Sequence record: NC_048047.1
Length of the DNA: 64,000 bases
Direction: 5' to 3' (one strand)
Positions 12,856 through 61,223 of the stretch are shown here, one piece after another. The position numbers and the translations under genes are program-made. The notes under the pieces are model-generated. The model was not told the DNA's origin, made no database searches, and was given only the letters and a program-made list of their open reading frames with translations. The first letter of the stretch is position 1. Every line of letters starts with the position of its first letter.

Positions 12856-13656
12856 ATGCTCTCGACCCCCGCGATCAAAGAGGCCTACGAATTCGCCTGT
12901 CAGGCGCATGCGGGGCAAATGTACGGCGACCAGACGTACGACGTCCACTTCCTTTCGGTCGCCCAGACCCTGGTCGAGCACGGCTATGACACCGACGACT
13001 GGATCATCATGGGCCTGACCCACGATGTGGTCGAGGACACCCCGGTCACCAAGGGTCAATTGGCCGACCGTTATGGCGACAATGTGGCCGAAGGCGTGTG
13101 GACGGTTTCGGGCTTTGGCGCCACCCGTGCGATCCGCAACGGCTGCATTGCCCTGAAGCTCTTGCGCCGGCCGCAGTACGCGCCTTTGAAGTGCGCCGAT
13201 CGAATCAGAAACGTTCGATCCGCCGCCGAGAAGAAGTCCATCCGCCATGCCGAACTCTATCTGGGCGAGGCCGGCGAATTCGATCCGCTGGTCAAGGGCC
13301 ACGTCCTGGCCTCGATGTTCCGCGACTTGCAAGACGCCTACCATGAAGCCGAACTCATGCTTCAGGCCGAGGGCGTCCAACGGAAGACTGGGCCGGCGAT
13401 GGAAGTCCACCCCGACGCCGCCTTCGACGATCAGGCGATCGACGCCTTTGCCGAGGCGCTGAAGGTCAAGATGGCCCAGTCTCGCGCCAAGGGCCGGGGA
13501 GGATGGAGCCGGCCCGAAGAGGTCTCCCAGGCCGCCCTGGTCGAGGCGTTGCATCATCACGTGAGCAAAGGTGATCCCCGTGACGTGGCGCTGTTCGCCA
13601 TGATGCTCAACTACCATGGCTGGTCGACGGCCATGACGCTTTCCGAGGCTGCATGA
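12856..13656 (+). CDS. Mesh1/small alarmone hydrolase-like HD protein fused to a helical phage domain
   Basis: AHAGQ, Y..H, THDVVEDT, KCADRIRN; C-terminal HPD..DD.AID.FA...K.KM..SRAKGRGGW...HV.KGDP.DVA..AMML. Confidence 0.8.
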   Translation: MLSTPAIKEAYEFACQAHAGQMYGDQTYDVHFLSVAQTLVEHGYDTDDWIIMGLTHDVVEDTPVTKGQLADRYGDNVAEGVWTVSGFGATRAIRNGCIALKLLRRPQYAPLKCADRIRNVRSAAEKKSIRHAELYLGEAGEFDPLVKGHVLASMFRDLQDAYHEAELMLQAEGVQRKTGPAMEVHPDAAFDDQAIDAFAEALKVKMAQSRAKGRGGWSRPEEVSQAALVEALHHHVSKGDPRDVALFAMMLNYHGWSTAMTLSEAA

Positions 13657-19243: not shown

Positions 19244-19614
19244 CCCTGCACAAGAACATCGCCGACGCGGTCGGCGCCAATGTCTCGCAACTCATGCTGC
19301 GCACCGAATTCGAGAGCGCGGCCAACGACATTCTGGCGCTGCTGGGGCCGCATGCCGAACTCGCCTGGGCCATCCATGCCGTCGAGCAGACCCTGCCCGG
19401 CTGGGGCTGGCTGACTCGGGCCGACGCGGAGCAAGGCTACTTCGCCAACATCATGACCCCCGACTTCGCGGGCGGCGTGGCGCTCGTCGACGGCTTCGTC
19501 CTGGACTTCAGCGTGGGGGAACGGTTCATGGCCTATGCCAAAACCCCTGGTGAGGCCCTTCTGAACTCCCTGGGACAGGTCACCGCTCGATTGAAGAAGA
19601 CCGCCGATGCCTAG
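19240..19614 (+). CDS. Hypothetical protein
   Basis: ATGA coupling at 19240. Confidence 0.7.
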   Translation: MTLHKNIADAVGANVSQLMLRTEFESAANDILALLGPHAELAWAIHAVEQTLPGWGWLTRADAEQGYFANIMTPDFAGGVALVDGFVLDFSVGERFMAYAKTPGEALLNSLGQVTARLKKTADA

Positions 19615-20791
19615 CCGTATCCTGATCCCCTCCGACCTGCTGCGTCTGCGTCAGGGCTTCCAGAGCATCGACCGCGACGTCCGCTTCGTCGGCGGCTGCG
19701 TGCGCGACACCTTGTTCGGCCTCGTGCCCAAGGACATTGATCTCTGCACCGACGCCTCGATCAACGAGATGATCCTGATCGCCAGCCGTCTGGGGATCAC
19801 CGTGATCCCCACCGGTGCCGAGCACGGCACCCTGACGTTCAAGCTCGACAGCGGCCTCTACGAGATCACCTGCCTGCGTGAGGAGACCAAGCACGACGGC
19901 CGCCGCGCCGAGTGCCGCTTTGGTCGGGATTGGGACAAGGACCTCTCGCGCCGCGACCTTACCATCAATGCCATGGCCATGGACTTCGACGGCGTGATCT
20001 ACGACCCGTTCGGCGGCCAGAAGGACCTGGAGCACGGCATCGTTCGCTTCGTGGGCGAGGCCGCCGATCGGATGCGGGAGGACTACCTGCGCATCCTGCG
20101 GTGGCTGCGCTTCCACGGACGCTATCGCGGCGCGCCAATCGACTTCCACGCCATGCTCGCCGCCCAGGACGTTCGCGAGGGACTTTCGAAGCGGGACGTC
20201 GATGGATCGTTCCTGATCTCGCGTGAGCGGGTCTGGGCCGAGATGGCCAAAATCTTCGCCGGCCCCAGCGTCGGCTACATCCTTCACTACCTCGTCTACA
20301 TGCGCCTGGACGAGCACATCGACATGAAGGGTCCCTATAACGTCAACCGCCTGGAGTGGGTGGCCAAGAAGACCGACGACTACATCGTCCGCCTTGTGGC
20401 GTTCATGACGTCCGTGGCCCAGGTCGAGGCGCTGGCCGAGGCCTGGAAGTGGAGCGTTGACGAGCGCAAACGCGCCGTTTTCCTGGCCAAGGAGGCCTAT
20501 GGACGTCGTACGCGCCTGGACTGGTTGGTGCTGATGGGTATGGCGTCCAAGGAATGGGCCGAGGACATCGCCCTCATCCGCGAGGACGAGGAGACCTTTG
20601 AGACCCTGCGTGCCTGGAATCCGCCCAGCTTCCCGCTGCGTGGCCAGGATTTGCTGGACATAGGCTTCACGCCGGGTCCCGCGATCGGCTACCATCTGGA
20701 TGAACTTCGGGTCGCCTGGGCGCATGCCGACGGCCTCCTCACCAAAGAGCAACTTCTTCAAGGCGTCACGCCGGAGACCAATTATGGCTGA
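19607..20791 (+). CDS. cca: Class II tRNA nucleotidyltransferase (CCA-adding enzyme / poly(A) polymerase family)
   Basis: VGGCVRD...DID, RRDLTINAMA, DPFGG..DL, EDYLRILR.LRF. Confidence 0.9.
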   Translation: MPSRILIPSDLLRLRQGFQSIDRDVRFVGGCVRDTLFGLVPKDIDLCTDASINEMILIASRLGITVIPTGAEHGTLTFKLDSGLYEITCLREETKHDGRRAECRFGRDWDKDLSRRDLTINAMAMDFDGVIYDPFGGQKDLEHGIVRFVGEAADRMREDYLRILRWLRFHGRYRGAPIDFHAMLAAQDVREGLSKRDVDGSFLISRERVWAEMAKIFAGPSVGYILHYLVYMRLDEHIDMKGPYNVNRLEWVAKKTDDYIVRLVAFMTSVAQVEALAEAWKWSVDERKRAVFLAKEAYGRRTRLDWLVLMGMASKEWAEDIALIREDEETFETLRAWNPPSFPLRGQDLLDIGFTPGPAIGYHLDELRVAWAHADGLLTKEQLLQGVTPETNYG

Positions 20792-34280: not shown

Positions 34281-34517
34281 ATGCCACACGTTGTCACCGT
34301 TGAGGACGCCATGGCGATCCTGGCGTCCATGCCCAAGAAGGCCGTCCTGGTGATTGGCAACGAGTGCGTCGCCGGCCTGTCCCTGCAAGAGGGCCGGGTC
34401 CGCGAAGGCTACTACAACAAGTCGTTCAAACCGCTCGAAGGCGGTCGTGATCAGGCCGTGCGCTTCACGACCGTCACCGAACTTTCCACCGGCGAAGTCA
34501 CTGAGGTGCCCCTATGA
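34281..34517 (+). CDS. Hypothetical protein
   Basis: Co-directional ORF, GC3 bias. Confidence 0.7.
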   Translation: MPHVVTVEDAMAILASMPKKAVLVIGNECVAGLSLQEGRVREGYYNKSFKPLEGGRDQAVRFTTVTELSTGEVTEVPL

Positions 34518-35155
34518 TCGGCGCGTTCGATCTCCTGCTGCGCAAGGCCGGCGCCGTGCGCTTCTCGGTCAACGAGAACCGAAGCTACTACGAAACGGCC
34601 GCGATCGACTTCCACAAGCACATGATGCTGCCGGAGGAATGGTCGAACACGATCGAGAAGGCCATGATCGAAACCCTGGGCGCCCAGAAGGACTCGCCCA
34701 TCACGACGACCAAGATTTTCCTGCGCGACGAGGTCCAGGGCAAGGAACGTTCCTTCACCGCCGGCGTCAACCCGGCGCTCGTGATCGCCAGGGCTCTTGA
34801 TCGCTGGCGTCTTGAAACCGGGAACCTCGATCCGATCACGGACTTCGCGGCCGACGAGATGTTGGAGTTGGAACAGGCGATGATCTACCTGACGGTAGAG
34901 TCCGTCTCCTGGTACATCGACGGCAACGAGCATCTGCGCGACGGCGCGTCCACATACGCCGAGATCGTCCGTGACTATCCAGGCTCTTTTCCGACCTGGG
35001 TCGGCGAGCCTGTTGCTGACGACTACACCGGCGACATCATGATCCTGACCTTCTATCCCGATACACCCATCGGCTCCTACCGAATGGCGGCTGCGACGCT
35101 GCCGGAAGTCCTACGAGCCGCCCACGCCCTGATGAGAGAATTGCGCGGACAATGA
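34514..35155 (+). CDS. Hypothetical protein
   Basis: Coupled; C-terminal FYPDTPIG phage motif. Confidence 0.75.
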   Translation: MIGAFDLLLRKAGAVRFSVNENRSYYETAAIDFHKHMMLPEEWSNTIEKAMIETLGAQKDSPITTTKIFLRDEVQGKERSFTAGVNPALVIARALDRWRLETGNLDPITDFAADEMLELEQAMIYLTVESVSWYIDGNEHLRDGASTYAEIVRDYPGSFPTWVGEPVADDYTGDIMILTFYPDTPIGSYRMAAATLPEVLRAAHALMRELRGQ

Positions 35156-36000
35156 GCCTCTTCGAAACCAAGGACGCCTTTGGCGACCGCATGAAGGCCT
35201 ACGAGAAGGTTGAGACCGGTCGCCGTTTCATGCCGGGCCTGCCGCTCTACGTCCGCCTGGACGGACGGGGCTTCTCGCGCTTCACCAAGGGCATGGCCAA
35301 ACCCTTTGATCCGCGCATGACCGAGGCGATGGCCGAGACCACCCGCACGCTGGTGGCCAAGACCCACGCCAGCCTCGGCTACTGCCAATCCGACGAGATC
35401 AGCTTGGTCTTCATGCCCAAGGACCAGATCAACGACTACTTCTTCGCCGGCAAAGTGCAGAAGATCGTCTCGGTCCTGGCTGGCCTATGCTCGACCGTTT
35501 TCTATCGCGAGTTCGAGGTTCAATGCGGCGATCATATCCCCACACGCGGCGTCGAGCATCCCGACCAGTTCCTCAGGCGCTTGCCGCACTTTGACGCCCG
35601 CGCCTTCCAGGTGCCGGTGCTCTACGAGGTCGCCAACGCGGTCCTGTGGCGTGTCAAGGACGCCGAACGCAATGCCGTGCAGATGGCGGCCCAGGCGGTC
35701 TATTCGCAGCGGGACCTGCACAAACAGCCCACCCGCAAGCTGCGCGAGATGATCGCCGAAGCTGGCGTCGACTTCGAGGCCTACCCCAGGGCGGTGCGGT
35801 CGGGCCGCTTCTACGCGCGCATCACCGAAGAACGGGCGACGCCGCCGGAAATTCTGGCCAGGATGAAGGAGAAGGATCGCGACAAGAACGCGATCATCAG
35901 CCGCAGCGAAGTCCAGGAGATCATCCCCGAAGGGCCGATCACCTACCAGACGATCGCCGACCTCTTGAAGTTCGATCCGCCCGCGACGGTGGCGCCGTGA
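35152..36000 (+). CDS. thg1: tRNA(His) guanylyltransferase / Thg1-like 3'-5' polymerase
   Basis: RMK.YE, RLDGRGFSRFT, SDEISL, KI.S, FDARAF, WR..DA.RN. Confidence 0.9.
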   Translation: MSLFETKDAFGDRMKAYEKVETGRRFMPGLPLYVRLDGRGFSRFTKGMAKPFDPRMTEAMAETTRTLVAKTHASLGYCQSDEISLVFMPKDQINDYFFAGKVQKIVSVLAGLCSTVFYREFEVQCGDHIPTRGVEHPDQFLRRLPHFDARAFQVPVLYEVANAVLWRVKDAERNAVQMAAQAVYSQRDLHKQPTRKLREMIAEAGVDFEAYPRAVRSGRFYARITEERATPPEILARMKEKDRDKNAIISRSEVQEIIPEGPITYQTIADLLKFDPPATVAP

Positions 36001-36254
36001 GCCGCGTCGTCGTTCATGAGCGCAACGACCGCTCGATCTTCTACATGGTCGCCCTTGATGGCGCCGGCCCGCCCACGCGCCTGCATGCCGACCCGGATAA
36101 GGCGCTGAAGGAGGCCAAGCGCCTGACCAAGCACTTCAAGCGCCCCGCCCGTATCCTGATGCAGATCGGCATGGTCTTTCCGACCTCCCAGCCGGACTCC
36201 GTCATCGTGGCGAATTTCGCCGTCGGCCAATGGTACACCGAACATGGCTCATGA
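35997..36254 (+). CDS. Hypothetical phage protein
   Basis: GTGA coupling; PT..H....A.KEA.RL. Confidence 0.7.
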   Translation: MSRVVVHERNDRSIFYMVALDGAGPPTRLHADPDKALKEAKRLTKHFKRPARILMQIGMVFPTSQPDSVIVANFAVGQWYTEHGS

Positions 36255-37482: not shown

Positions 37483-38097
37483 GTGACCTACCAATCCACT
37501 CTGAAACCGCCGGGCTTCGTCACCGAGGAGGGCGGTTTTCGCGACTACCTCCACGTCTGGATCAAGGGTTCGCCCGAGGGCGCCTCGGGTGAACTGGCGC
37601 TGGGCGTCAGCCTGGGAAGCGACGACACGACCGAGCCGCCCAACCTGCGCGAAGCCATCGCGGTGATCGCCGCCTTCGCCAGCGGCGTGATCATGAAGCA
37701 ACCCGGCTTCGTCGGCATGACCGACGAGCAGCGCGAGCATGCCGTCCAGGGTGGGGTCTACCGGCTGCTTTCGGCCGTCATCGAGTCGGCCGCTCCGGGT
37801 TTCGGTCCGCATCCTGGCACACTGCTGCCGCCCGAGCCGATCGAGGACGAACCCGAAGCTATCCAAGCCATTGGCATCTGGGCCACACCCGGCGCCGATG
37901 GCGGCTTCTTCGCAGAGTTCATCGACGAACCGTCGACCATGCCCGTCGGCGCCATCCTGGCCGCAGCCGCGCTCGAAGCCGGTGTCGCCACTGAAGGCTC
38001 GGACGAAGACGTCTACGACACCGCCCTGGTGCGCGCTGTCCAGGCCGACTTCAACAAGACGATCGAAACCGCGCTCGTGGTCGGGACCGTCCAGTGA
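37483..38097 (+). CDS. Acidic hypothetical protein (first gene of the NAD operon)
   Basis: GTG 37483 after GGGGAG. Confidence 0.7.
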   Translation: MTYQSTLKPPGFVTEEGGFRDYLHVWIKGSPEGASGELALGVSLGSDDTTEPPNLREAIAVIAAFASGVIMKQPGFVGMTDEQREHAVQGGVYRLLSAVIESAAPGFGPHPGTLLPPEPIEDEPEAIQAIGIWATPGADGGFFAEFIDEPSTMPVGAILAAAALEAGVATEGSDEDVYDTALVRAVQADFNKTIETALVVGTVQ

Positions 38098-38783
38098 TCC
38101 ACAGCACCCTCCTTCGCGTCTGCGCGCTGGCCGTCCTGGCCAGCGCCTTCGTCTCGACGGCCCAGGCCGCAGACCTCGCCGGCTCGGTCAGCCTGACCAG
38201 CGCCTACATCTCTCGCGGCACCGACCAGAACGTCCTCAACGGCGCGGCCGTCCAAGGCTTCGTGACCTACACACGTGGCCCGTTCTATGTCAGCGCCTTC
38301 GCCTCGTCCATGAACTACGGCGAGGGCACGACCAAGGAACTCGACTTCTTCGGCGGGGTGCGCAAGAGCGTAGGCCCCTGGACGGTCGATCTCGGGTTCG
38401 CCAACATCAACTACCCCGACAACCACACGCCGCTGAACTTCGTCGAGTACGATCTGAAGGTCGACCGCGCGATCGGCAAGGGCAACGTCGGGGTCTGGCT
38501 CGGCTACACTGACGCCTACTTCAACACCTACGGCCAGGGCGTCTGGACCGAGGCCCACGCCAGCTATCCGATCACCTCGACGGTGACGATCAGCGGGGCG
38601 GTCGCCAACCAGGACCTGCCCAACAACTTCGACTACCGGACCTGGAACGTGGGCGCGACGAAAAGCTTCGCGCACGGCGTTTCGGCCGACCTGCGCTATA
38701 GCGATACCGACCGTCACGATCTGGACCCCCGCTGGCACACCTACAGCGCGCGGACCTCGCTGACCCTCACCAAGAGCTTCTAG
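38094..38783 (+). CDS. TorF/TIGR02001-like outer-membrane beta-barrel porin
   Basis: Sec signal ending AQA|A; S.Y.SRG..Q...AVQG, ELDFFGG, alternating beta pattern, C-terminal Phe. Confidence 0.75.
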   Translation: MIHSTLLRVCALAVLASAFVSTAQAADLAGSVSLTSAYISRGTDQNVLNGAAVQGFVTYTRGPFYVSAFASSMNYGEGTTKELDFFGGVRKSVGPWTVDLGFANINYPDNHTPLNFVEYDLKVDRAIGKGNVGVWLGYTDAYFNTYGQGVWTEAHASYPITSTVTISGAVANQDLPNNFDYRTWNVGATKSFAHGVSADLRYSDTDRHDLDPRWHTYSARTSLTLTKSF

Positions 38784-50403: not shown

Positions 50404-50859
50404 ATGGCCAACGACCAGAACCGCGATTTCACCTGCTGCTACCTGCTGATGCGTGTCGACCTTAAGTCGCTGTGCGCCGGCAAGGCGATCGCCCAGGCCC
50501 ACCACGCCGGGCTTCAGTTGGAGCATGACGCCAAGGACTGGACCTCCGAGCAGCAGGCGATCTTCGCCCGCTATCGCAAGGAGGCCCGTGGCTTCGGGAC
50601 GACCATGACCCTGGCTGTCACCGAGCAGGAGATGCGCGCGGCGATGATTCGCGCTCGCGACCTGGGCTACCTGCATGGCGTGGTCCACGATCCTTCCTAT
50701 CCGCTCTATGATGGCGGGTTCCTGCACCACATCCCGCTGGACACCTGCGCCTACGTCTTCGGCGAGAAGCGCTTCGTCGAGAACGCGGTGATAGGCCTGG
50801 ACCTCCTGCGTCGCGCCAGTCTCTGGCAGCCGGTGTCCAAAGTGCCGGCCGATGGCTGA
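50404..50859 (+). CDS. Divergent Pth2-like (peptidyl-tRNA hydrolase type 2 fold) protein
   Basis: LLMRVDL....GKAIAQAHHA, TMTLAV, VHDP, TCAYVFG, LDLL. Confidence 0.65.
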   Translation: MANDQNRDFTCCYLLMRVDLKSLCAGKAIAQAHHAGLQLEHDAKDWTSEQQAIFARYRKEARGFGTTMTLAVTEQEMRAAMIRARDLGYLHGVVHDPSYPLYDGGFLHHIPLDTCAYVFGEKRFVENAVIGLDLLRRASLWQPVSKVPADG

Positions 50860-58335: not shown

Positions 58336-60495
58336 ATGATGGAAGACAGCCCCCTTTGGAAAGCCATTGGTCTCTGGGAAGAGATCACCGGCGTGGCTGT
58401 GCCCAATGCCGACGGCTCGTTCAAGGGCACGCTGGGCGAATACGACATTCGCCAGACCTATATCGAACTGCGCGAGACCCTGGAGCTTGATCCCACCGAG
58501 GTCACGACGAACCTGATCTTCAACACGTTCGTCAAGCAGTGGATGGCCAAGCAGCAAAACAGCCTGCTCGACCTCTTCAACGACCCGGTCAAGTACGAGC
58601 AGAAGCTGGAAAAGCCGCGTCTGCTGATGAGCATCCTCAACCGCCCCGAGATCATCGAGGCGCGTGACGCGTTCCTGGCGTCGTTGAACGAACTGACCGT
58701 CCGGTACGGCGCCGATCAGCGCGCTGATCTCCAGAAGACCCTGGTACAGTACGACCTGCTCGCCTTCCTGCGCCGCGACGCGCTGCGGGCCTCCGCGCGC
58801 CTGCGCATCCACCAGTTCACCTCTGGCGCCCCAGAGGCTGCTGACTACAAGCCCGTCTTCGTCAAGACCGTCCACCAGTGGTGGAACATCAACTCGCTGC
58901 TCGAAGCAGCCCTGCGCATGCCTTCGGGCATCTCTCTGAACCTGATCCGCGACCCGGACATGTTCCAGTCGTTCTTTTGCTTCTGCATCCGCAATGGCGG
59001 CAACCTCTTCATCCTCACCGACGCGCCCGAGAACGCCCATCCCCTGCAAGGGTTGTTCCGTCGCAAGCCAGAACGCGCCTACGAGGCGCGCGTCAGCAAG
59101 TCGTGGTTCCCCTATGACCTGATGAACCTGGAGTGGGATGAGGAAACCGAACGCTATTTCCAGGCGGAGTCGACGGTCACCGCCCTGGCGACCTACCAGA
59201 ACCAGCACCTGCCGCTGAAGCCCTTCAACGAGCTTGACCCGGCCGAATTCCTGTGGTGCTCGATGATGCTCGACCTGATCGTCGAGAAGTTCTGGCGCCA
59301 GAACTATCAGCACCCCTCGCTGTCCTATACCGGCGAAATGCTGATCATCGAAAATCGCCTGGAAACCAGCGCCGCGAGCGCCGGCCTGCCCGTGGCCGCA
59401 TACCAGCCGCTGAACCTGCCGGCGCTGTCCGCCGCCGACATGAAGACCGACCGTCTCGACGAGGCCGCGATCGGCCTCTCCTACCACAAGCCCAACCTTT
59501 GGTTGGAGGAGCGGTTTGGGCACAAGGTCCAGGACGCGGCCCTAAACCTCGTGGCTGACACCAGCCAACTGATCCTGATGGACAAGTCGACGGGGGAGAT
59601 CACCACCGAAGGCCGCGAGTTCATCAAGAAGTACGAGGCCATTCCGTCGGTGTTCACCGACCGGAAGGCTCAGATGATGGCCGGCCGCGTCAAGATGCAG
59701 GTCCTCAATCCCACGCGGTTTGGCACCCGCGAGGAACTGGACAACGACCGCAAGTTCATCGCCCGCTACAACTACGCCACCGAAATCGGGCGCATGGCCC
59801 ATGAGGAGTTCGCGGCGCGCAAGGACGCGATCAAGGCGTGGTGGAAGAAGGCGGTCGAGAAGAACCGCGACAACCTCCTGGCCTACGCCGCCGCCGAGAG
59901 CGTCTGGGTCTGGTCGGACATGAAGGGCTCGGGCGACACCTTCGACCATATGCGCTCGGGCGCTGGGCCGCGCTATCGCGTCGACCTGGGCCAAGGCGAT
60001 CAAGGCGGCTTCCGCAGCCGCCGCTACAAGGACGCCCACAAGTTCACCCACCGCGTCCCGATGGAGAAGTTCGACTACTCCACCCTGGGCTTTGAGTGGG
60101 TCAATCTCGGCGACTATGAGCACAAGCGTCGCTATCTCTGCGCGATCAACGAGACCAAGGCCTCGTTCATGCAGTGCTTCCACCCGACCAATGCCGACGA
60201 ACTGGCGATCCTGGCCGGCTGCACCGTCGAGGAGCTTCCTGACGTGCTTCAGCACTGGACCCTGGCTGATCCCTACGACGGCAATCACCTCCTGAGCCGG
60301 ATCGATCCGCTCAACTGGAACGTCAAGAACCCGTGGCTGAGTCTGAGCTTCCGTGTCGGCATCCCGTTGTCGATGCGCGGCGCGGCCAAGATCGCACCGA
60401 TGGCCCGTAAGCCGGCGATCCCCAACATCATCCCGGACGATCTGATCGTTGACGATCGCCCCTCCTTCCCTTCGCCTTTCAGGACCGAACAATGA
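58336..60495 (+). CDS. Large hypothetical protein (719 aa)
   Basis: Longest ORF in the window, strong GC3 bias; no motif recognised. Confidence 0.85.
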   Translation: MMEDSPLWKAIGLWEEITGVAVPNADGSFKGTLGEYDIRQTYIELRETLELDPTEVTTNLIFNTFVKQWMAKQQNSLLDLFNDPVKYEQKLEKPRLLMSILNRPEIIEARDAFLASLNELTVRYGADQRADLQKTLVQYDLLAFLRRDALRASARLRIHQFTSGAPEAADYKPVFVKTVHQWWNINSLLEAALRMPSGISLNLIRDPDMFQSFFCFCIRNGGNLFILTDAPENAHPLQGLFRRKPERAYEARVSKSWFPYDLMNLEWDEETERYFQAESTVTALATYQNQHLPLKPFNELDPAEFLWCSMMLDLIVEKFWRQNYQHPSLSYTGEMLIIENRLETSAASAGLPVAAYQPLNLPALSAADMKTDRLDEAAIGLSYHKPNLWLEERFGHKVQDAALNLVADTSQLILMDKSTGEITTEGREFIKKYEAIPSVFTDRKAQMMAGRVKMQVLNPTRFGTREELDNDRKFIARYNYATEIGRMAHEEFAARKDAIKAWWKKAVEKNRDNLLAYAAAESVWVWSDMKGSGDTFDHMRSGAGPRYRVDLGQGDQGGFRSRRYKDAHKFTHRVPMEKFDYSTLGFEWVNLGDYEHKRRYLCAINETKASFMQCFHPTNADELAILAGCTVEELPDVLQHWTLADPYDGNHLLSRIDPLNWNVKNPWLSLSFRVGIPLSMRGAAKIAPMARKPAIPNIIPDDLIVDDRPSFPSPFRTEQ

Positions 60496-61223
60496 GCGTC
60501 TACACCCAGCTTCCCGCCAATGGCGTCCCGATCCGCTGTCTGGGTTCGGACAAGGACTATATCGAGCGGGCGCGCGTCTGGGCCGTCGAGAACACCAAGT
60601 TCACGGTCGCCCAGATCAGGCCCAAGGAAAACCACGGCAACGTCGCCGAGAACATCATGGTCTTCGAGACTTTCGAGCAGAAGCGGGATTTCGCCCGGAA
60701 GTGGCTGGTCGGCGTTCACTTCGCGCCGCTCGACAAGATTCCCTGGGAACGAGCCTATCCTGACCAACCCCTGTTCAGTGACGAGACCTGGAGCGCCCCG
60801 CCGGTGCGCCACGAATATTCCGAACTGGTGATGTACTCGATCATCAGCGAGGAAGCCCTGAAGGCCATGAAGGGCAATCGCGGCAAGCTGGTCTCCCAGG
60901 GCGGGCATGCCTACCTGCACACGTGGTGGGACTCCGAGCGGCGCTTCTCCAGCGCGGCCTACGCGTACCGCAACTCCAACGCGGCCGTGAAGGTGGCGCT
61001 TAGGCCGATGCAAGACCTTGCTCTGCCCGACATCCTGGTGGCCGACACCGAAGACCAGCTTTCGGCCCTCTACGACATCTTCCATCCGATCTGTGGGTGT
61101 ACCCTGACCCGCGACGCCGCCCGGACCGTCTTCACCGAACCGACGGTGACCTTCCTGGGTGTGGGGCCGATCTACAAGACCCTCTTCAACGAACTGGCGC
61201 CGGGGCTGCGTCCACTCCTTTAG
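60492..61223 (+). CDS. pth2: Peptidyl-tRNA hydrolase type 2 (Pth2) fused to an unknown N-terminal domain
   Basis: MKGNRGKLVSQGGHA, VKVAL, DTEDQL, RDAARTVF.EPTVTFLGVGP, LRPL. Confidence 0.8.
   Translation: MSVYTQLPANGVPIRCLGSDKDYIERARVWAVENTKFTVAQIRPKENHGNVAENIMVFETFEQKRDFARKWLVGVHFAPLDKIPWERAYPDQPLFSDETWSAPPVRHEYSELVMYSIISEEALKAMKGNRGKLVSQGGHAYLHTWWDSERRFSSAAYAYRNSNAAVKVALRPMQDLALPDILVADTEDQLSALYDIFHPICGCTLTRDAARTVFTEPTVTFLGVGPIYKTLFNELAPGLRPLL

What the first reader, a model, noticed from the sequence alone, without database searches (positions are those of the whole stretch)
35152..36000. Thg1-like enzyme in a phage whose inferred host does not need G-1 on tRNA(His)
Seen: intact Thg1 motifs including both metal-binding Asp residues. 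Known: Caulobacter and related alphaproteobacteria have tRNA(His) lacking G-1 and a HisRS that does not require it; bacterial Thg1-like proteins can repair truncated tRNA 5' ends by templated 3'-5' synthesis. Inference (depends on the host assignment): the phage enzyme is for 5'-end repair or another RNA substrate rather than His identity.
Basis: partly seen in the sequence, partly recalled or inferred. Interest (0 to 1): 0.65.

Follow-up and report, generated by a model that had tools for sequence, protein, structure and literature searches.

The report
Phage Thg1-like tRNA 5'-end repair enzyme
The gene is a real, well-conserved Thg1-like "reverse" RNA polymerase, already annotated in Caulobacter phage CcrBL9. 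Neither the host's nor the phage's own histidine tRNA uses the extra G-1 nucleotide, so it is most likely a general repair enzyme for damaged tRNA 5' ends, which is the role expected for this family.

Summary
The window is Caulobacter phage CcrBL9 (322 kb; host C. vibrioides CB15). ORF 35152-36000 (+) is gp364, publicly annotated as tRNA-His guanylyltransferase. It is a genuine Thg1-like protein (TLP):
- Pfam Thg1 E=6e-30.
- The model (pLDDT 88) superposes on Bacillus thuringiensis TLP.
- All catalytic residues are invariant.
- dN/dS is 0.09 against phage CcrSC.
- The eukaryotic Thg1 HINN motif is absent.

- The phage's own tRNA-His has U at -1, G1·U72 and no encoded G-1, which is the host-type "ΔG-1" pattern.
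- Four other TLP-carrying phage lineages of ΔG-1-clade hosts also lack G at -1.
- Three TLP phages of ordinary hosts encode G-1/C73, so they do not need the enzyme for G-1 either.
- Two TLP phages have no tRNA-His at all.
- The host lacks any Thg1 homologue.

The argument is not special to Caulobacter. 5'-end restoration by jumbo-phage Thg1 is already in the literature (Iyer et al. 2021). The enzyme sits in a window that also encodes a CCA-adding enzyme, a Pth2 protein and an HD-type hydrolase.

Verdict: an ordinary, uncharacterised member of a known family with a misleading product name. This scan's first readers noted the same idea on several other phage pieces.

The parts
35152..36000 (+). 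Thg1-like protein (TLP) gene, CcrBL9 gp364, 282 aa. Catalytic residues: E18, R35, D37, K50, S80, D81, E82, K104, R150, N174. C-terminal beta-hairpin with near-invariant R251.
   Evidence: ORF. Pfam, PHROG and PDB matches. Invariant columns. Model and fold match to 4kgm/4kgk. dN/dS 0.09 against CcrSC.
34514..35155 (+). gp365, 213-aa protein of unknown function. Its stop overlaps the TLP start (ATGA), so the two are probably translationally coupled.
   Evidence: No Pfam or PHROG match. Conserved only within Bertelyvirus, so it is not a conserved TLP partner.
35997..36254 (+). gp363, 85-aa protein of unknown function. Its GTG start overlaps the TLP stop (GTGA).
   Evidence: No family match. Found in Bertelyvirus only.
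19607..20788 (+). CCA-adding tRNA nucleotidyltransferase (394 aa). It is the 3'-end counterpart of the TLP. The link is inferred from co-occurrence, not from adjacency.
   Evidence: PF01743 E=2.6e-27. It co-occurs with a TLP in Bertelyvirus, Colossusvirus, Brevundimonas phages, Atu_ph07, MD18 and DSS3_MAL1. Both are absent from phiCbK.
60492..61223 (+). Protein with a C-terminal Pth2 peptidyl-tRNA hydrolase domain. Context only: another tRNA-care gene in the same window.
   Evidence: PF01981 E=5e-6, above the cut-off.
12856..13656 (+). HD_4 (RelA/SpoT-type hydrolase) domain protein. Context only.
   Evidence: PF13328 E=5e-8, above the cut-off.

Best explanation
gp364 is an active Thg1-like protein, a two-metal 3'-5' nucleotidyltransferase.

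Proposed mechanism. The enzyme activates the 5' end of a tRNA that has lost one or more 5' nucleotides. It then re-adds them one at a time, using the intact 3' strand of the acceptor stem (positions 72, 71, ...) as a Watson-Crick template. Substrate choice depends on acceptor-stem length and the tRNA elbow, not on the histidine anticodon.

Proposed role. In the infected cell it serves as the 5'-end arm of a dispersed phage kit that keeps tRNAs usable. The other parts are 28 phage tRNAs, a tmRNA, a CCA-adding enzyme, RNA-ligase-family proteins, Pth2 and an HD hydrolase. It does not establish tRNA-His identity.

What is shown: family membership, an intact active site, the fold, purifying selection, and that G-1 is unnecessary for both host and phage tRNA-His.

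What is inferred: the substrate (5'-truncated tRNA), the templated chemistry, and the biological purpose (quality control or counter-defence).
For: Family, residues and fold:
-.
- The closest solved relative is BtTLP. [quoted passage not shown]
- The eukaryotic Thg1 'HINN' segment reads 'ERNA' here, as in BtTLP ('SKNS').
- The model has a long C-terminal beta-hairpin (strands 219-229 and 248-257) carrying the near-invariant R251. This is consistent with the elbow-binding hairpin and conserved Arg of the M. acetivorans TLP (PMC4820378).

Selection: dN/dS is 0.09 against CcrSC.

G-1 is not needed:
- Host HisRS biochemistry.
- Cellular tRNA-His genes of the host's order are of the ΔG-1 type.
- The phage tRNA-His has U-1, G1·U72 and G73.
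- None of five phage lineages infecting ΔG-1-clade hosts has G at -1.

TLP presence is independent of tRNA-His:
- Yersinia phage fHe-Yen9-04 and Burkholderia phage BcepSauron have a TLP but no tRNA-His.
- Phages G, XacN1 and D148 encode G-1/C73 in the gene.
- phiCbK has no TLP but does have a tRNA-His-like cloverleaf.

No cellular source of the activity: there is no Thg1 family hit in the C. vibrioides control genome, nor in 150 other genomes of the sampled order.

Companion genes: CCA enzyme, Pth2, HD_4 and RNA_ligase-family hits.

Published expectation for jumbo-phage Thg1: PMC7824862.
Against: - No biochemical or transcript data exist for this protein. I found no RNA run holding the gene.
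- No host nuclease that trims tRNA 5' ends in Caulobacter is known to me.
- No conserved neighbouring gene points to a pathway.
- TLPs can also add G-1 to tRNAs with a His anticodon through a second binding mode (PMC4820378). Activity on tRNA-His therefore cannot be excluded from sequence alone.
- The three Dolichocephalovirinae tRNA-His types all deviate from the cellular G1·U72/A73 pattern (G73; U1·U72; C1-G72). The repair model does not explain this.
Confidence: 0.65

Rival explanations
1. The database annotation is literally right. The enzyme adds a -1 nucleotide (G-1 or another) to tRNA-His, either the phage's or the host's, to alter or secure histidine identity.
For: - The product name in GenBank and PHROG.
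- TLPs retain a His-anticodon-dependent binding mode.
- Within Dolichocephalovirinae, the three TLP-bearing groups all carry a standard-looking tRNA-His in the Leu(gag)-His-Ala slot.
Against: - Host HisRS does not need G-1, and G-1 lowers its efficiency five-fold.
- The phage tRNA-His has G73, so a templated addition would give C-1, not G-1.
- TLPs occur in phages without any tRNA-His.
- phiCbK, which lacks a TLP, still has a tRNA-His-like gene.
- The phage has no full-length HisRS.
Confidence: 0.08
2. The enzyme is a maturation or 5'-editing factor for the phage's own tRNAs, as in mitochondrial 5' tRNA editing. It would replace a mismatched or mis-cut 5' nucleotide.
For: - CcrColossus and CcrPW tRNA-His has a U1·U72 mismatch.
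- One CcrBL9 tRNA-Met has U1·U72.
- Dictyostelium and Acanthamoeba TLPs perform this kind of editing (general knowledge of the family; PMC3561963 is listed).
Against: - In CcrBL9, 27 of 28 tRNAs have fully paired acceptor stems (Watson-Crick or G·U). The exception is a U1·U72 tRNA-Met, which is most simply read as initiator-like. Nothing in this phage needs editing.
- A templated repair of G1·U72 would give A1-U72, changing a host-type feature.
Confidence: 0.1
3. The enzyme acts on something other than tRNA. It could extend or cap the 5' end of another RNA (tmRNA, a phage transcript, a primer), or make a small nucleotide product, as the related GGDEF and Cas10 palm domains do.
For: - The Thg1 palm domain is related to GGDEF and CRISPR polymerase domains (PMC2904730; weak fold hits at ranks 34-49).
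- The phage has its own tmRNA.
Against: - The full TLP architecture is conserved, including the C-terminal hairpin used for the tRNA elbow.
- All strong structural matches are Thg1/TLP.
- TLP-carrying phage records are large genomes (most about 100 kb or more), and every TLP phage whose tRNA genes I examined carries tRNA genes.
Confidence: 0.12
4. The gene is an inactive relic carried along in a large genome.
For: There is no obvious need for G-1 in this host.
Against: - dN/dS is 0.09.
- Every catalytic residue is invariant.
- The ORF is intact in all 11 Bertelyvirus records.
Confidence: 0.02

Closest known systems
Bacillus thuringiensis Thg1-like protein (BtTLP; PDB 4KGK/4KGM)
   Same: - Best sequence match (E=6.6e-24) and best fold match (TM 0.83-0.85).
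- Same three carboxylates and the same triphosphate-binding and activation residues.
- Lacks the Thg1 HINN motif.
- Similar length, single-domain architecture.
   Different: - About 28-31% identity only.
- The Bertelyvirus protein has a 17-21-residue, lower-confidence insertion around residues 125-145 and a longer C-terminal tail.
- It is encoded by a phage whose host has ΔG-1 tRNA-His.
- Its activity is untested.
Methanosarcina acetivorans TLP with tRNA-Phe(delta1) (PDB 5AXK-5AXN)
   Same: - Same fold (TM 0.77-0.80 by target length).
- The model has a C-terminal beta-hairpin with a near-invariant Arg (R251). This resembles the elbow-measuring hairpin and R215 of MaTLP.
   Different: - About 21% identity.
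- The equivalence of R251 and R215 is inferred, not aligned residue by residue.
Eukaryotic Thg1 (yeast, human, Candida; PDB 3OTB, 3WBZ, 5XOX)
   Same: Same palm fold and the same catalytic carboxylates.
   Different: - True Thg1 adds a non-templated G-1 opposite A73 and reads the His anticodon.
- Here the HINN segment is replaced, and neither the host nor the phage tRNA-His needs G-1.
Thg1 genes of other jumbo phages (Iyer et al. 2021, PMC7824862; e.g. 201phi2-1, GAP32, phage G)
   Same: - Homologous at 31-50% identity.
- Large genomes with tRNA sets and other RNA-repair genes.
- 5'-nucleotide restoration has already been proposed for them.
   Different: - CcrBL9 and other phages of alphaproteobacteria add the case in which G-1 restoration cannot be the purpose.
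- Bertelyvirus TLPs form their own clade, grouping weakly with alphaproteobacterial (probably prophage) copies.

Membership tests
Thg1/TLP superfamily (Pfam PF04446) | Significant match to the Thg1 catalytic domain over its full length | tested here: met
   E=6.3e-30, 104 bits against a cut-off of 29.2, profile positions 2-130 of 130. The whole-genome six-frame scan finds only this copy.
Thg1/TLP superfamily (Pfam PF04446) | Three conserved carboxylates (hTHG1 D29, D76, E77; BtTLP D30, D75, E76) | tested here: met
   D37, D81 and E82 align to them. They are invariant in alignments of 10 and 30 sequences.
Thg1/TLP superfamily (Pfam PF04446) | Activation-step and nucleotidyl-transfer residues (Sc K44/S75/N161; R27/K96/R133) | tested here: met
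   K50 (K or R in relatives), S80 and N174, plus R35, K104 and R150, lie in the aligned motifs.
Thg1/TLP superfamily (Pfam PF04446) | Polymerase-like palm fold with a fingers region, as in the solved structures | tested here: met
   The model (pLDDT 87.7) has 32 PDB matches at E<=1e-3, and every one listed is Thg1 or TLP.
Thg1/TLP superfamily (Pfam PF04446) | Homotetramer (dimer of dimers) | not tested
   No complex prediction was run. It would not change the reading.
Eukaryote-type Thg1 (G-1 addition opposite A73) | Conserved HINNLYN motif, recalled from the literature on the Thg1/TLP distinction | tested here: not met
   The segment aligned to Candida Thg1 'dchinn' reads 'daerna'.
Eukaryote-type Thg1 (G-1 addition opposite A73) | A cognate tRNA-His that requires post-transcriptional G-1 | tested here: not met
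   - Host HisRS is G-1-independent.
- Phage tRNA-His is G1·U72/G73 with U at -1.
- Cellular tRNA-His genes of the host's order are of the ΔG-1 type.
Bacterial/archaeal TLP (templated 5'-end repair) | Closest relatives are characterised TLPs rather than Thg1 | tested here: met
   BtTLP scores E=6.6e-24, against 4e-8 or weaker for Thg1 proteins. The fold ranking agrees.
Bacterial/archaeal TLP (templated 5'-end repair) | Flexible beta-hairpin with a conserved Arg that binds the tRNA elbow | tested here: inconclusive
   The hairpin (219-229 and 248-257) and R251 (at least 90% conserved) are present. No residue-level superposition on MaTLP R215 was available.
Bacterial/archaeal TLP (templated 5'-end repair) | Watson-Crick-templated 3'-5' addition to 5'-truncated tRNAs | not testable with these tools
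   Needs an enzyme assay.

The most novel reading that the evidence does not exclude
The TLP is not mere housekeeping. It could be one arm of a phage counter-defence, together with the CCA-adding enzyme, against an undiscovered Caulobacter or alphaproteobacterial nuclease that attacks the tRNA acceptor end.

Alternatively, it could remodel the 5' end of the phage's own atypical tRNA-His. In Bertelyvirus this tRNA has G73; in Colossusvirus it has U1·U72; in Brevundimonas phages it has C1-G72. Remodelling could create a phage-specific acceptor end, possibly read by the phage's stand-alone class-II synthetase-like core (gp471).
Probability: 0.12. Interest if true: 0.7.

Novelty: new member of a known kind. 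Interest (0 to 1): 0.3.

Why it matters
The practical point is annotation. 'tRNA-His guanylyltransferase' is almost certainly a misnomer for this gene, and probably for phage TLPs in general.

The comparison made here is a clean natural control:
- Phage tRNA-His genes copy their host's identity rule: G-1/C73 in ordinary hosts, and no G at -1 (mostly G1·U72) in ΔG-1-clade hosts.
- TLPs occur in both groups, and also in phages with no tRNA-His.

This argues that phage TLPs act in general 5'-end repair. CcrBL9 with C. vibrioides CB15 is a tractable pair in which any TLP phenotype cannot be confounded by G-1 addition. If a 5'-end-trimming host defence exists, this system would be a good place to find it. 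Otherwise the finding is ordinary.

Tried and rejected
1. tRNAs in the window: none. The phage's tRNAs lie elsewhere in the genome.

2. Mitochondrial-style 5' editing of phage tRNAs. The acceptor stems of all 28 tRNAs were inspected. Only a U1·U72 tRNA-Met, which I read as initiator-like, is mismatched. Rejected for CcrBL9.

3. A conserved operon partner. The coupled neighbours gp365 and gp363, and five further flanking genes, have no informative family match (one matches a PHROG of unknown function). They are conserved only within Bertelyvirus, and the contexts in Colossus, Bambus and C1 differ.

4. A phage-encoded canonical HisRS that might need G-1. Only a 241-aa class-II core without an anticodon-binding domain was found, and it is closest to GlyRS.

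5. Strict co-occurrence of TLP with tRNA-His. This fails in both directions.

6. RtcB: absent.

7. Getting a named Caulobacter genome. A scan with the phage porin-like gp359 found no relative, and genus names are withheld for genomes reached through loci. I therefore used the order of a Hyphomonadaceae MAG as a proxy.

8. Expression data. No RNA run holds the gene.

9. TLP phylogeny. The backbone is unresolved. Only the Bertelyvirus clade, the Colossus+Bambus pair and a weak link to alphaproteobacterial copies are supported. No donor can be named.

10. The large protein searches were not run, because the family scans left nothing open.

11. Literature searches found no paper on a phage TLP's activity or on the CcrBL9 gene.
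Full report
**What the window is.** Megablast shows the window is 100% identical to Caulobacter phage CcrBL9 (MH588546 / NC_048047; 322,272 bp; Dolichocephalovirinae, Bertelyvirus). The recorded host is Caulobacter vibrioides CB15. The genome tool places the window at 186001-250000. The ORF at 35152-36000 (+) is gp364, and the public record already names it 'tRNA-His guanylyltransferase'.

**The observation.** The ORF is intact at 282 codons.
- It matches Pfam Thg1 over the entire profile (E=6.3e-30).
- It matches PHROG 4717 (E=1.3e-70).
- It has no NCBIfam match.
- Its best solved relative is the Bacillus thuringiensis Thg1-like protein (4kgk, E=6.6e-24). Eukaryotic Thg1 proteins score far weaker, at E=4e-8 or worse.

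I read the alignment against the residue numbering of Hyde et al. 2013 (PMC3701042). This gives the following equivalences:

| CcrBL9 gp364 | Equivalent | Role |
|---|---|---|
| D37, D81 | BtTLP D30, D75 | metal ligands |
| E82 | BtTLP E76 | third carboxylate |
| E18, R35, R150 | BtTLP E12, R28, R131 | bind the incoming NTP |
| K50, S80, N174 | yeast K44, S75, N161 | activation step |
| K104 | yeast K96 | nucleotidyl transfer |

All except K50 (K or R in relatives) are invariant in an alignment of ten phage TLPs. In an alignment of 30 phage and cellular TLPs they are also invariant, apart from K104, which is at least 90% conserved.

An AlphaFold model built on the 30-sequence alignment is confident (pLDDT 87.7, pTM 0.84). 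Its 32 PDB matches at E<=1e-3 are, as far as listed, all Thg1 or TLP chains, with BtTLP first (TM 0.83-0.85 by target length over about 270 columns).

Against the sister phage CcrSC the gene has dS 0.48 and dN 0.044, so dN/dS is 0.09.

**Thg1 or TLP?** Three points place gp364 on the TLP side of the family, whose characterised members repair 5'-truncated tRNAs by templated addition.
- The segment that aligns with the eukaryotic 'HINN' of the HINNLYN motif reads 'ERNA' (BtTLP: 'SKNS').
- The model ends in a long beta-hairpin (strands 219-229 and 248-257) carrying R251, which is conserved in at least 90% of both alignments. In the M. acetivorans TLP-tRNA structure such a hairpin, with one fully conserved arginine, binds the tRNA elbow and measures acceptor-stem length (PMC4820378). 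The equivalence is plausible, but I could not verify it residue by residue.
- Sequence and fold rankings both put TLPs ahead of Thg1.

**The host side of the argument.**
- Yuan et al. [quoted passage not shown]
  - Adding G-1 lowers kcat/Km five-fold.
  - Identity rests on the anticodon, U72 and, more weakly, A73.
  - The ΔG-1 group has G1-U72, A73 and an enlarged D-loop with U20a.
- I checked this against genomes. One cellular TLP hit came from a Hyphomonadaceae MAG, and I used it as a centre to sample its taxonomic order. Names of the sampled genomes are withheld by the tool, so that this order includes the Caulobacteraceae is my inference from the record title.
  - A BLAST with a ΔG-1-type phage tRNA-His recovered eight cellular tRNA-His genes.
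  - All eight have C or T at -1, begin GCC and end GGT-A-CCA (G1·U72, C2-G71, C3-G70, A73), and have a nine-base D-loop. This is exactly the published ΔG-1 type.
- The Thg1 family was found in none of 150 other genomes of that order. It was also not found in the named C. vibrioides control genome.

So the host neither needs nor supplies this activity.

ARAGORN finds 28 tRNAs and a tmRNA in the CcrBL9 genome, none of them in the window. tRNA-His(GUG) lies at genome positions 82349-82421.
- It has U at -1, G1·U72, C2-G71, U3-A70, a D-loop ending GGTTA, and G73.
- After C74 the next gene (tRNA-Ala) starts with no spacer, so CCA is not encoded.
- CcrSC and C1 have the same ends, with a compensatory G5-C68 to A5-U68 change that confirms the stem register.

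This tRNA carries the host identity elements (anticodon, U72, an extra D-loop U). It has no G-1 in the gene and no C73 that could template one. A Watson-Crick-templated addition opposite G73 would give C, not G.

**Comparative test.** A tblastn of gp364 finds TLPs in 158 phage records. Most listed are genomes of about 100 kb or more, and they span Bacillus, Mycobacterium, many Proteobacteria and others. I examined tRNA-His in a sample.

Phages of hosts in Caulobacterales, Rhodobacterales and Rhizobiales (placing the last two in the ΔG-1 clade rests on the literature and my recollection; I did not test it here):

| Phage | -1 | 1:72 | 73 |
|---|---|---|---|
| Bertelyvirus (CcrBL9, CcrSC, C1) | U | G1·U72 | G |
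| CcrColossus / CcrPW | A | U1·U72 | A |
| Brevundimonas phage Bambus | C | C1-G72 | A |
| Phaeobacter phage MD18 | U | G1·U72 | U |
| Agrobacterium phage Atu_ph07 | U | G1·U72 | A |

None has G at -1.

Phages of ordinary hosts: Bacillus phage G, Xanthomonas phage XacN1 and Vibrio phage D148 all have G at -1 and C73. This is the canonical genome-encoded G-1.

Two TLP-bearing phages have tRNA sets but no tRNA-His at all:
- Yersinia phage fHe-Yen9-04, with 28 tRNAs called by ARAGORN and 32 Rfam matches.
- Burkholderia phage BcepSauron, with 9 tRNAs called by ARAGORN and 10 Rfam matches.

Conversely, phiCbK lacks both the TLP and the CCA enzyme. At first it appeared to lack tRNA-His too. However, the 83-nt spacer in the syntenic Leu(gag)-Ala slot folds into a cloverleaf with a GUG anticodon, G1·U72, C2-G71, C3-G70, U73 and CCA, and an unusual T-loop. 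ARAGORN calls it only at a relaxed threshold.

Phage tRNA-His genes therefore follow their host's identity rule, and TLP presence is independent of tRNA-His in both directions. This is the strongest sequence-level evidence available that the enzyme is not there for histidine identity.

**Other tests of rival readings.**
- The phage has no full-length HisRS. The only class-II synthetase signal is gp471 (genome 166555-167280, minus strand). It is a 241-aa catalytic core without an anticodon-binding domain. It scores at threshold for the HisRS and class-IIb Pfam models and is closest to GlyRS among solved structures.
- Apart from one U1·U72 tRNA-Met, which I read as initiator-like, all phage tRNAs have fully paired acceptor stems. 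Nothing in CcrBL9 calls for mitochondrial-type 5' editing.
- The stop codon of gp365 overlaps the TLP start (ATGA), and the TLP stop overlaps the gp363 start (GTGA). Neither these nor five further flanking genes have an informative family match. They are conserved only inside Bertelyvirus, and the contexts in Colossus, Bambus and C1 differ. The TLP is a stand-alone module.

**Context.** The same window encodes three other tRNA-related proteins on the same strand:
- a CCA-adding enzyme (19607-20788, PF01743 E=2.6e-27);
- a protein with a Pth2 peptidyl-tRNA hydrolase domain (60492-61223);
- an HD_4 RelA/SpoT-type hydrolase domain protein (12856-13656).

Elsewhere the genome has RNA_ligase-family ORFs and no RtcB.

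The CCA enzyme and the TLP co-occur 2-15 kb apart on the same strand in Bertelyvirus, Colossusvirus, several Brevundimonas phages (for example Bambus), MD18 and DSS3_MAL1. Both are also present, but far apart, in Atu_ph07. At least 24 records appear in both hit lists.

The phage's tRNA-His and tRNA-Val(GAC) lack encoded CCA, so a CCA enzyme also has a routine maturation role. Iyer et al. 2021 already list Thg1 with CCA-adding enzymes, RNA ligases and Pth2 as jumbo-phage RNA-repair functions, with Thg1 restoring 5' nucleotides (PMC7824862).

**Relatives in cells.** A profile scan of species-representative genomes returned at least 544 TLP-encoding stretches. They are dominated by Myxococcota and Planctomycetota, with some alphaproteobacterial copies: Enterovirga rhinocerotis (50% identity), a Hyphomonadaceae MAG, Jannaschia and Loktanella.
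- The Enterovirga copy sits in an array of small co-directional genes, several matching PHROGs, and is probably a prophage.
- In a maximum-likelihood tree, the Bertelyvirus TLPs form a fully supported clade. It groups weakly (80/58) with these alphaproteobacterial copies.
- Colossus and Bambus pair separately (98/97), and the backbone is unresolved. One Myxococcales row had an extreme branch length and should be ignored. I draw no donor from this tree.

**Conclusion.**
- Shown: gp364 is an intact, selected TLP. Neither host nor phage tRNA-His needs G-1. Phage TLPs are distributed independently of tRNA-His.
- Inferred from family biochemistry: gp364 rebuilds missing 5' nucleotides of tRNAs using the 3' strand as template, as the 5'-end counterpart of the CCA enzyme. 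I put this at about 0.65.
- Unexplained: what produces 5'-truncated tRNAs during infection, and why the Dolichocephalovirinae tRNA-His genes each deviate from the cellular G1·U72/A73 pattern.
- Novelty is low. The gene is annotated, the family is known in jumbo phages, and repair is the published expectation. I found no paper on the activity of any phage TLP or on this gene.
- First readers of this scan recorded the same idea on several other phage pieces.

Noticed in passing
outside the window: CcrBL9 genome 166555-167280 (-), locus L188:1056-1781: gp471 is annotated as hypothetical. It is a 241-aa stand-alone class-II aminoacyl-tRNA-synthetase catalytic core with no anticodon-binding domain.
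- Pfam tRNA-synt_2b scores 26.9 bits and tRNA-synt_His 25.5 bits. The best PDB match is GlyRS (1e-4), followed by PylRS.
- It is conserved in Bertelyvirus, Brevundimonas phages, Sinorhizobium phage Phosso, Xanthomonas phage XbC2 and huge metagenomic phages.
- It belongs to virus-dominated clusters of about 230-aa proteins.
- Its substrate is unknown.
   Followed up: partly
phiCbK JX100813 about 50600-50682 (locus L182:3601-3683): The spacer between tRNA-Leu(gag) and tRNA-Ala in phiCbK folds as a cloverleaf with a GUG anticodon, G1·U72, C2-G71, C3-G70, U73, CCA and a non-canonical T-loop. It looks like an unannotated, divergent tRNA-His that default ARAGORN and Rfam both miss.
   Followed up: partly
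outside the window: CcrBL9 genome 82349-82496 and 89129-89277 (locus L002): tRNA-His and tRNA-Val(GAC) lack an encoded CCA. Each ends at C74 directly against G1 of the next tRNA (Ala, Ile). Nearly all the other phage tRNAs encode CCA. These two would depend on a CCA-adding enzyme for maturation.
   Followed up: partly
loci L011:347-417 (CcrPW), L182:3684-3754 (phiCbK), L030 1375-1445 (Bambus): There are 71-nt 'tRNA-Ala(TGC)' copies with the anticodon at position 29, which appear to have a reduced D-arm. They are conserved next to the normal tRNA genes in three phage genera. The phiCbK copy was not reported by the Rfam tRNA model.
   Followed up: no
tRNA-His of CcrColossus/CcrPW (L016:1469-1543, L011:188-262) and Bambus (L030 1483-1558): The phage tRNA-His genes of this subfamily each deviate from the cellular G1·U72/A73 pattern in a different way: G73 (Bertelyvirus), a U1·U72 mismatch (Colossusvirus), and C1-G72 (Brevundimonas phage). 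Whether the host HisRS charges them is unknown.
   Followed up: partly
window 38094-38783 (+): The phage encodes an exported Gcw_chp / porin-like outer-membrane protein (PF09694 E=2.5e-19) just upstream of the PnuC-NadR NAD salvage genes. An 8-mer scan of species-representative genomes found no close cellular relative.
   Followed up: partly
window 12856-13656 (+) and 60492-61223 (+): An HD_4 (RelA/SpoT-type hydrolase) domain protein and a protein with a C-terminal Pth2 domain lie in the same window as the CCA enzyme and the TLP. Together they look like a dispersed tRNA-care gene set.
   Followed up: partly
locus L073 (Enterovirga rhinocerotis NZ_SNZR01000013.1 798744-805424): The closest cellular TLP (50% identity) lies in an array of small co-directional overlapping genes, three of which match PHROG families. 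It is probably a prophage in a Rhizobiales genome, a group I take to belong to the ΔG-1 clade (not tested here).
   Followed up: partly
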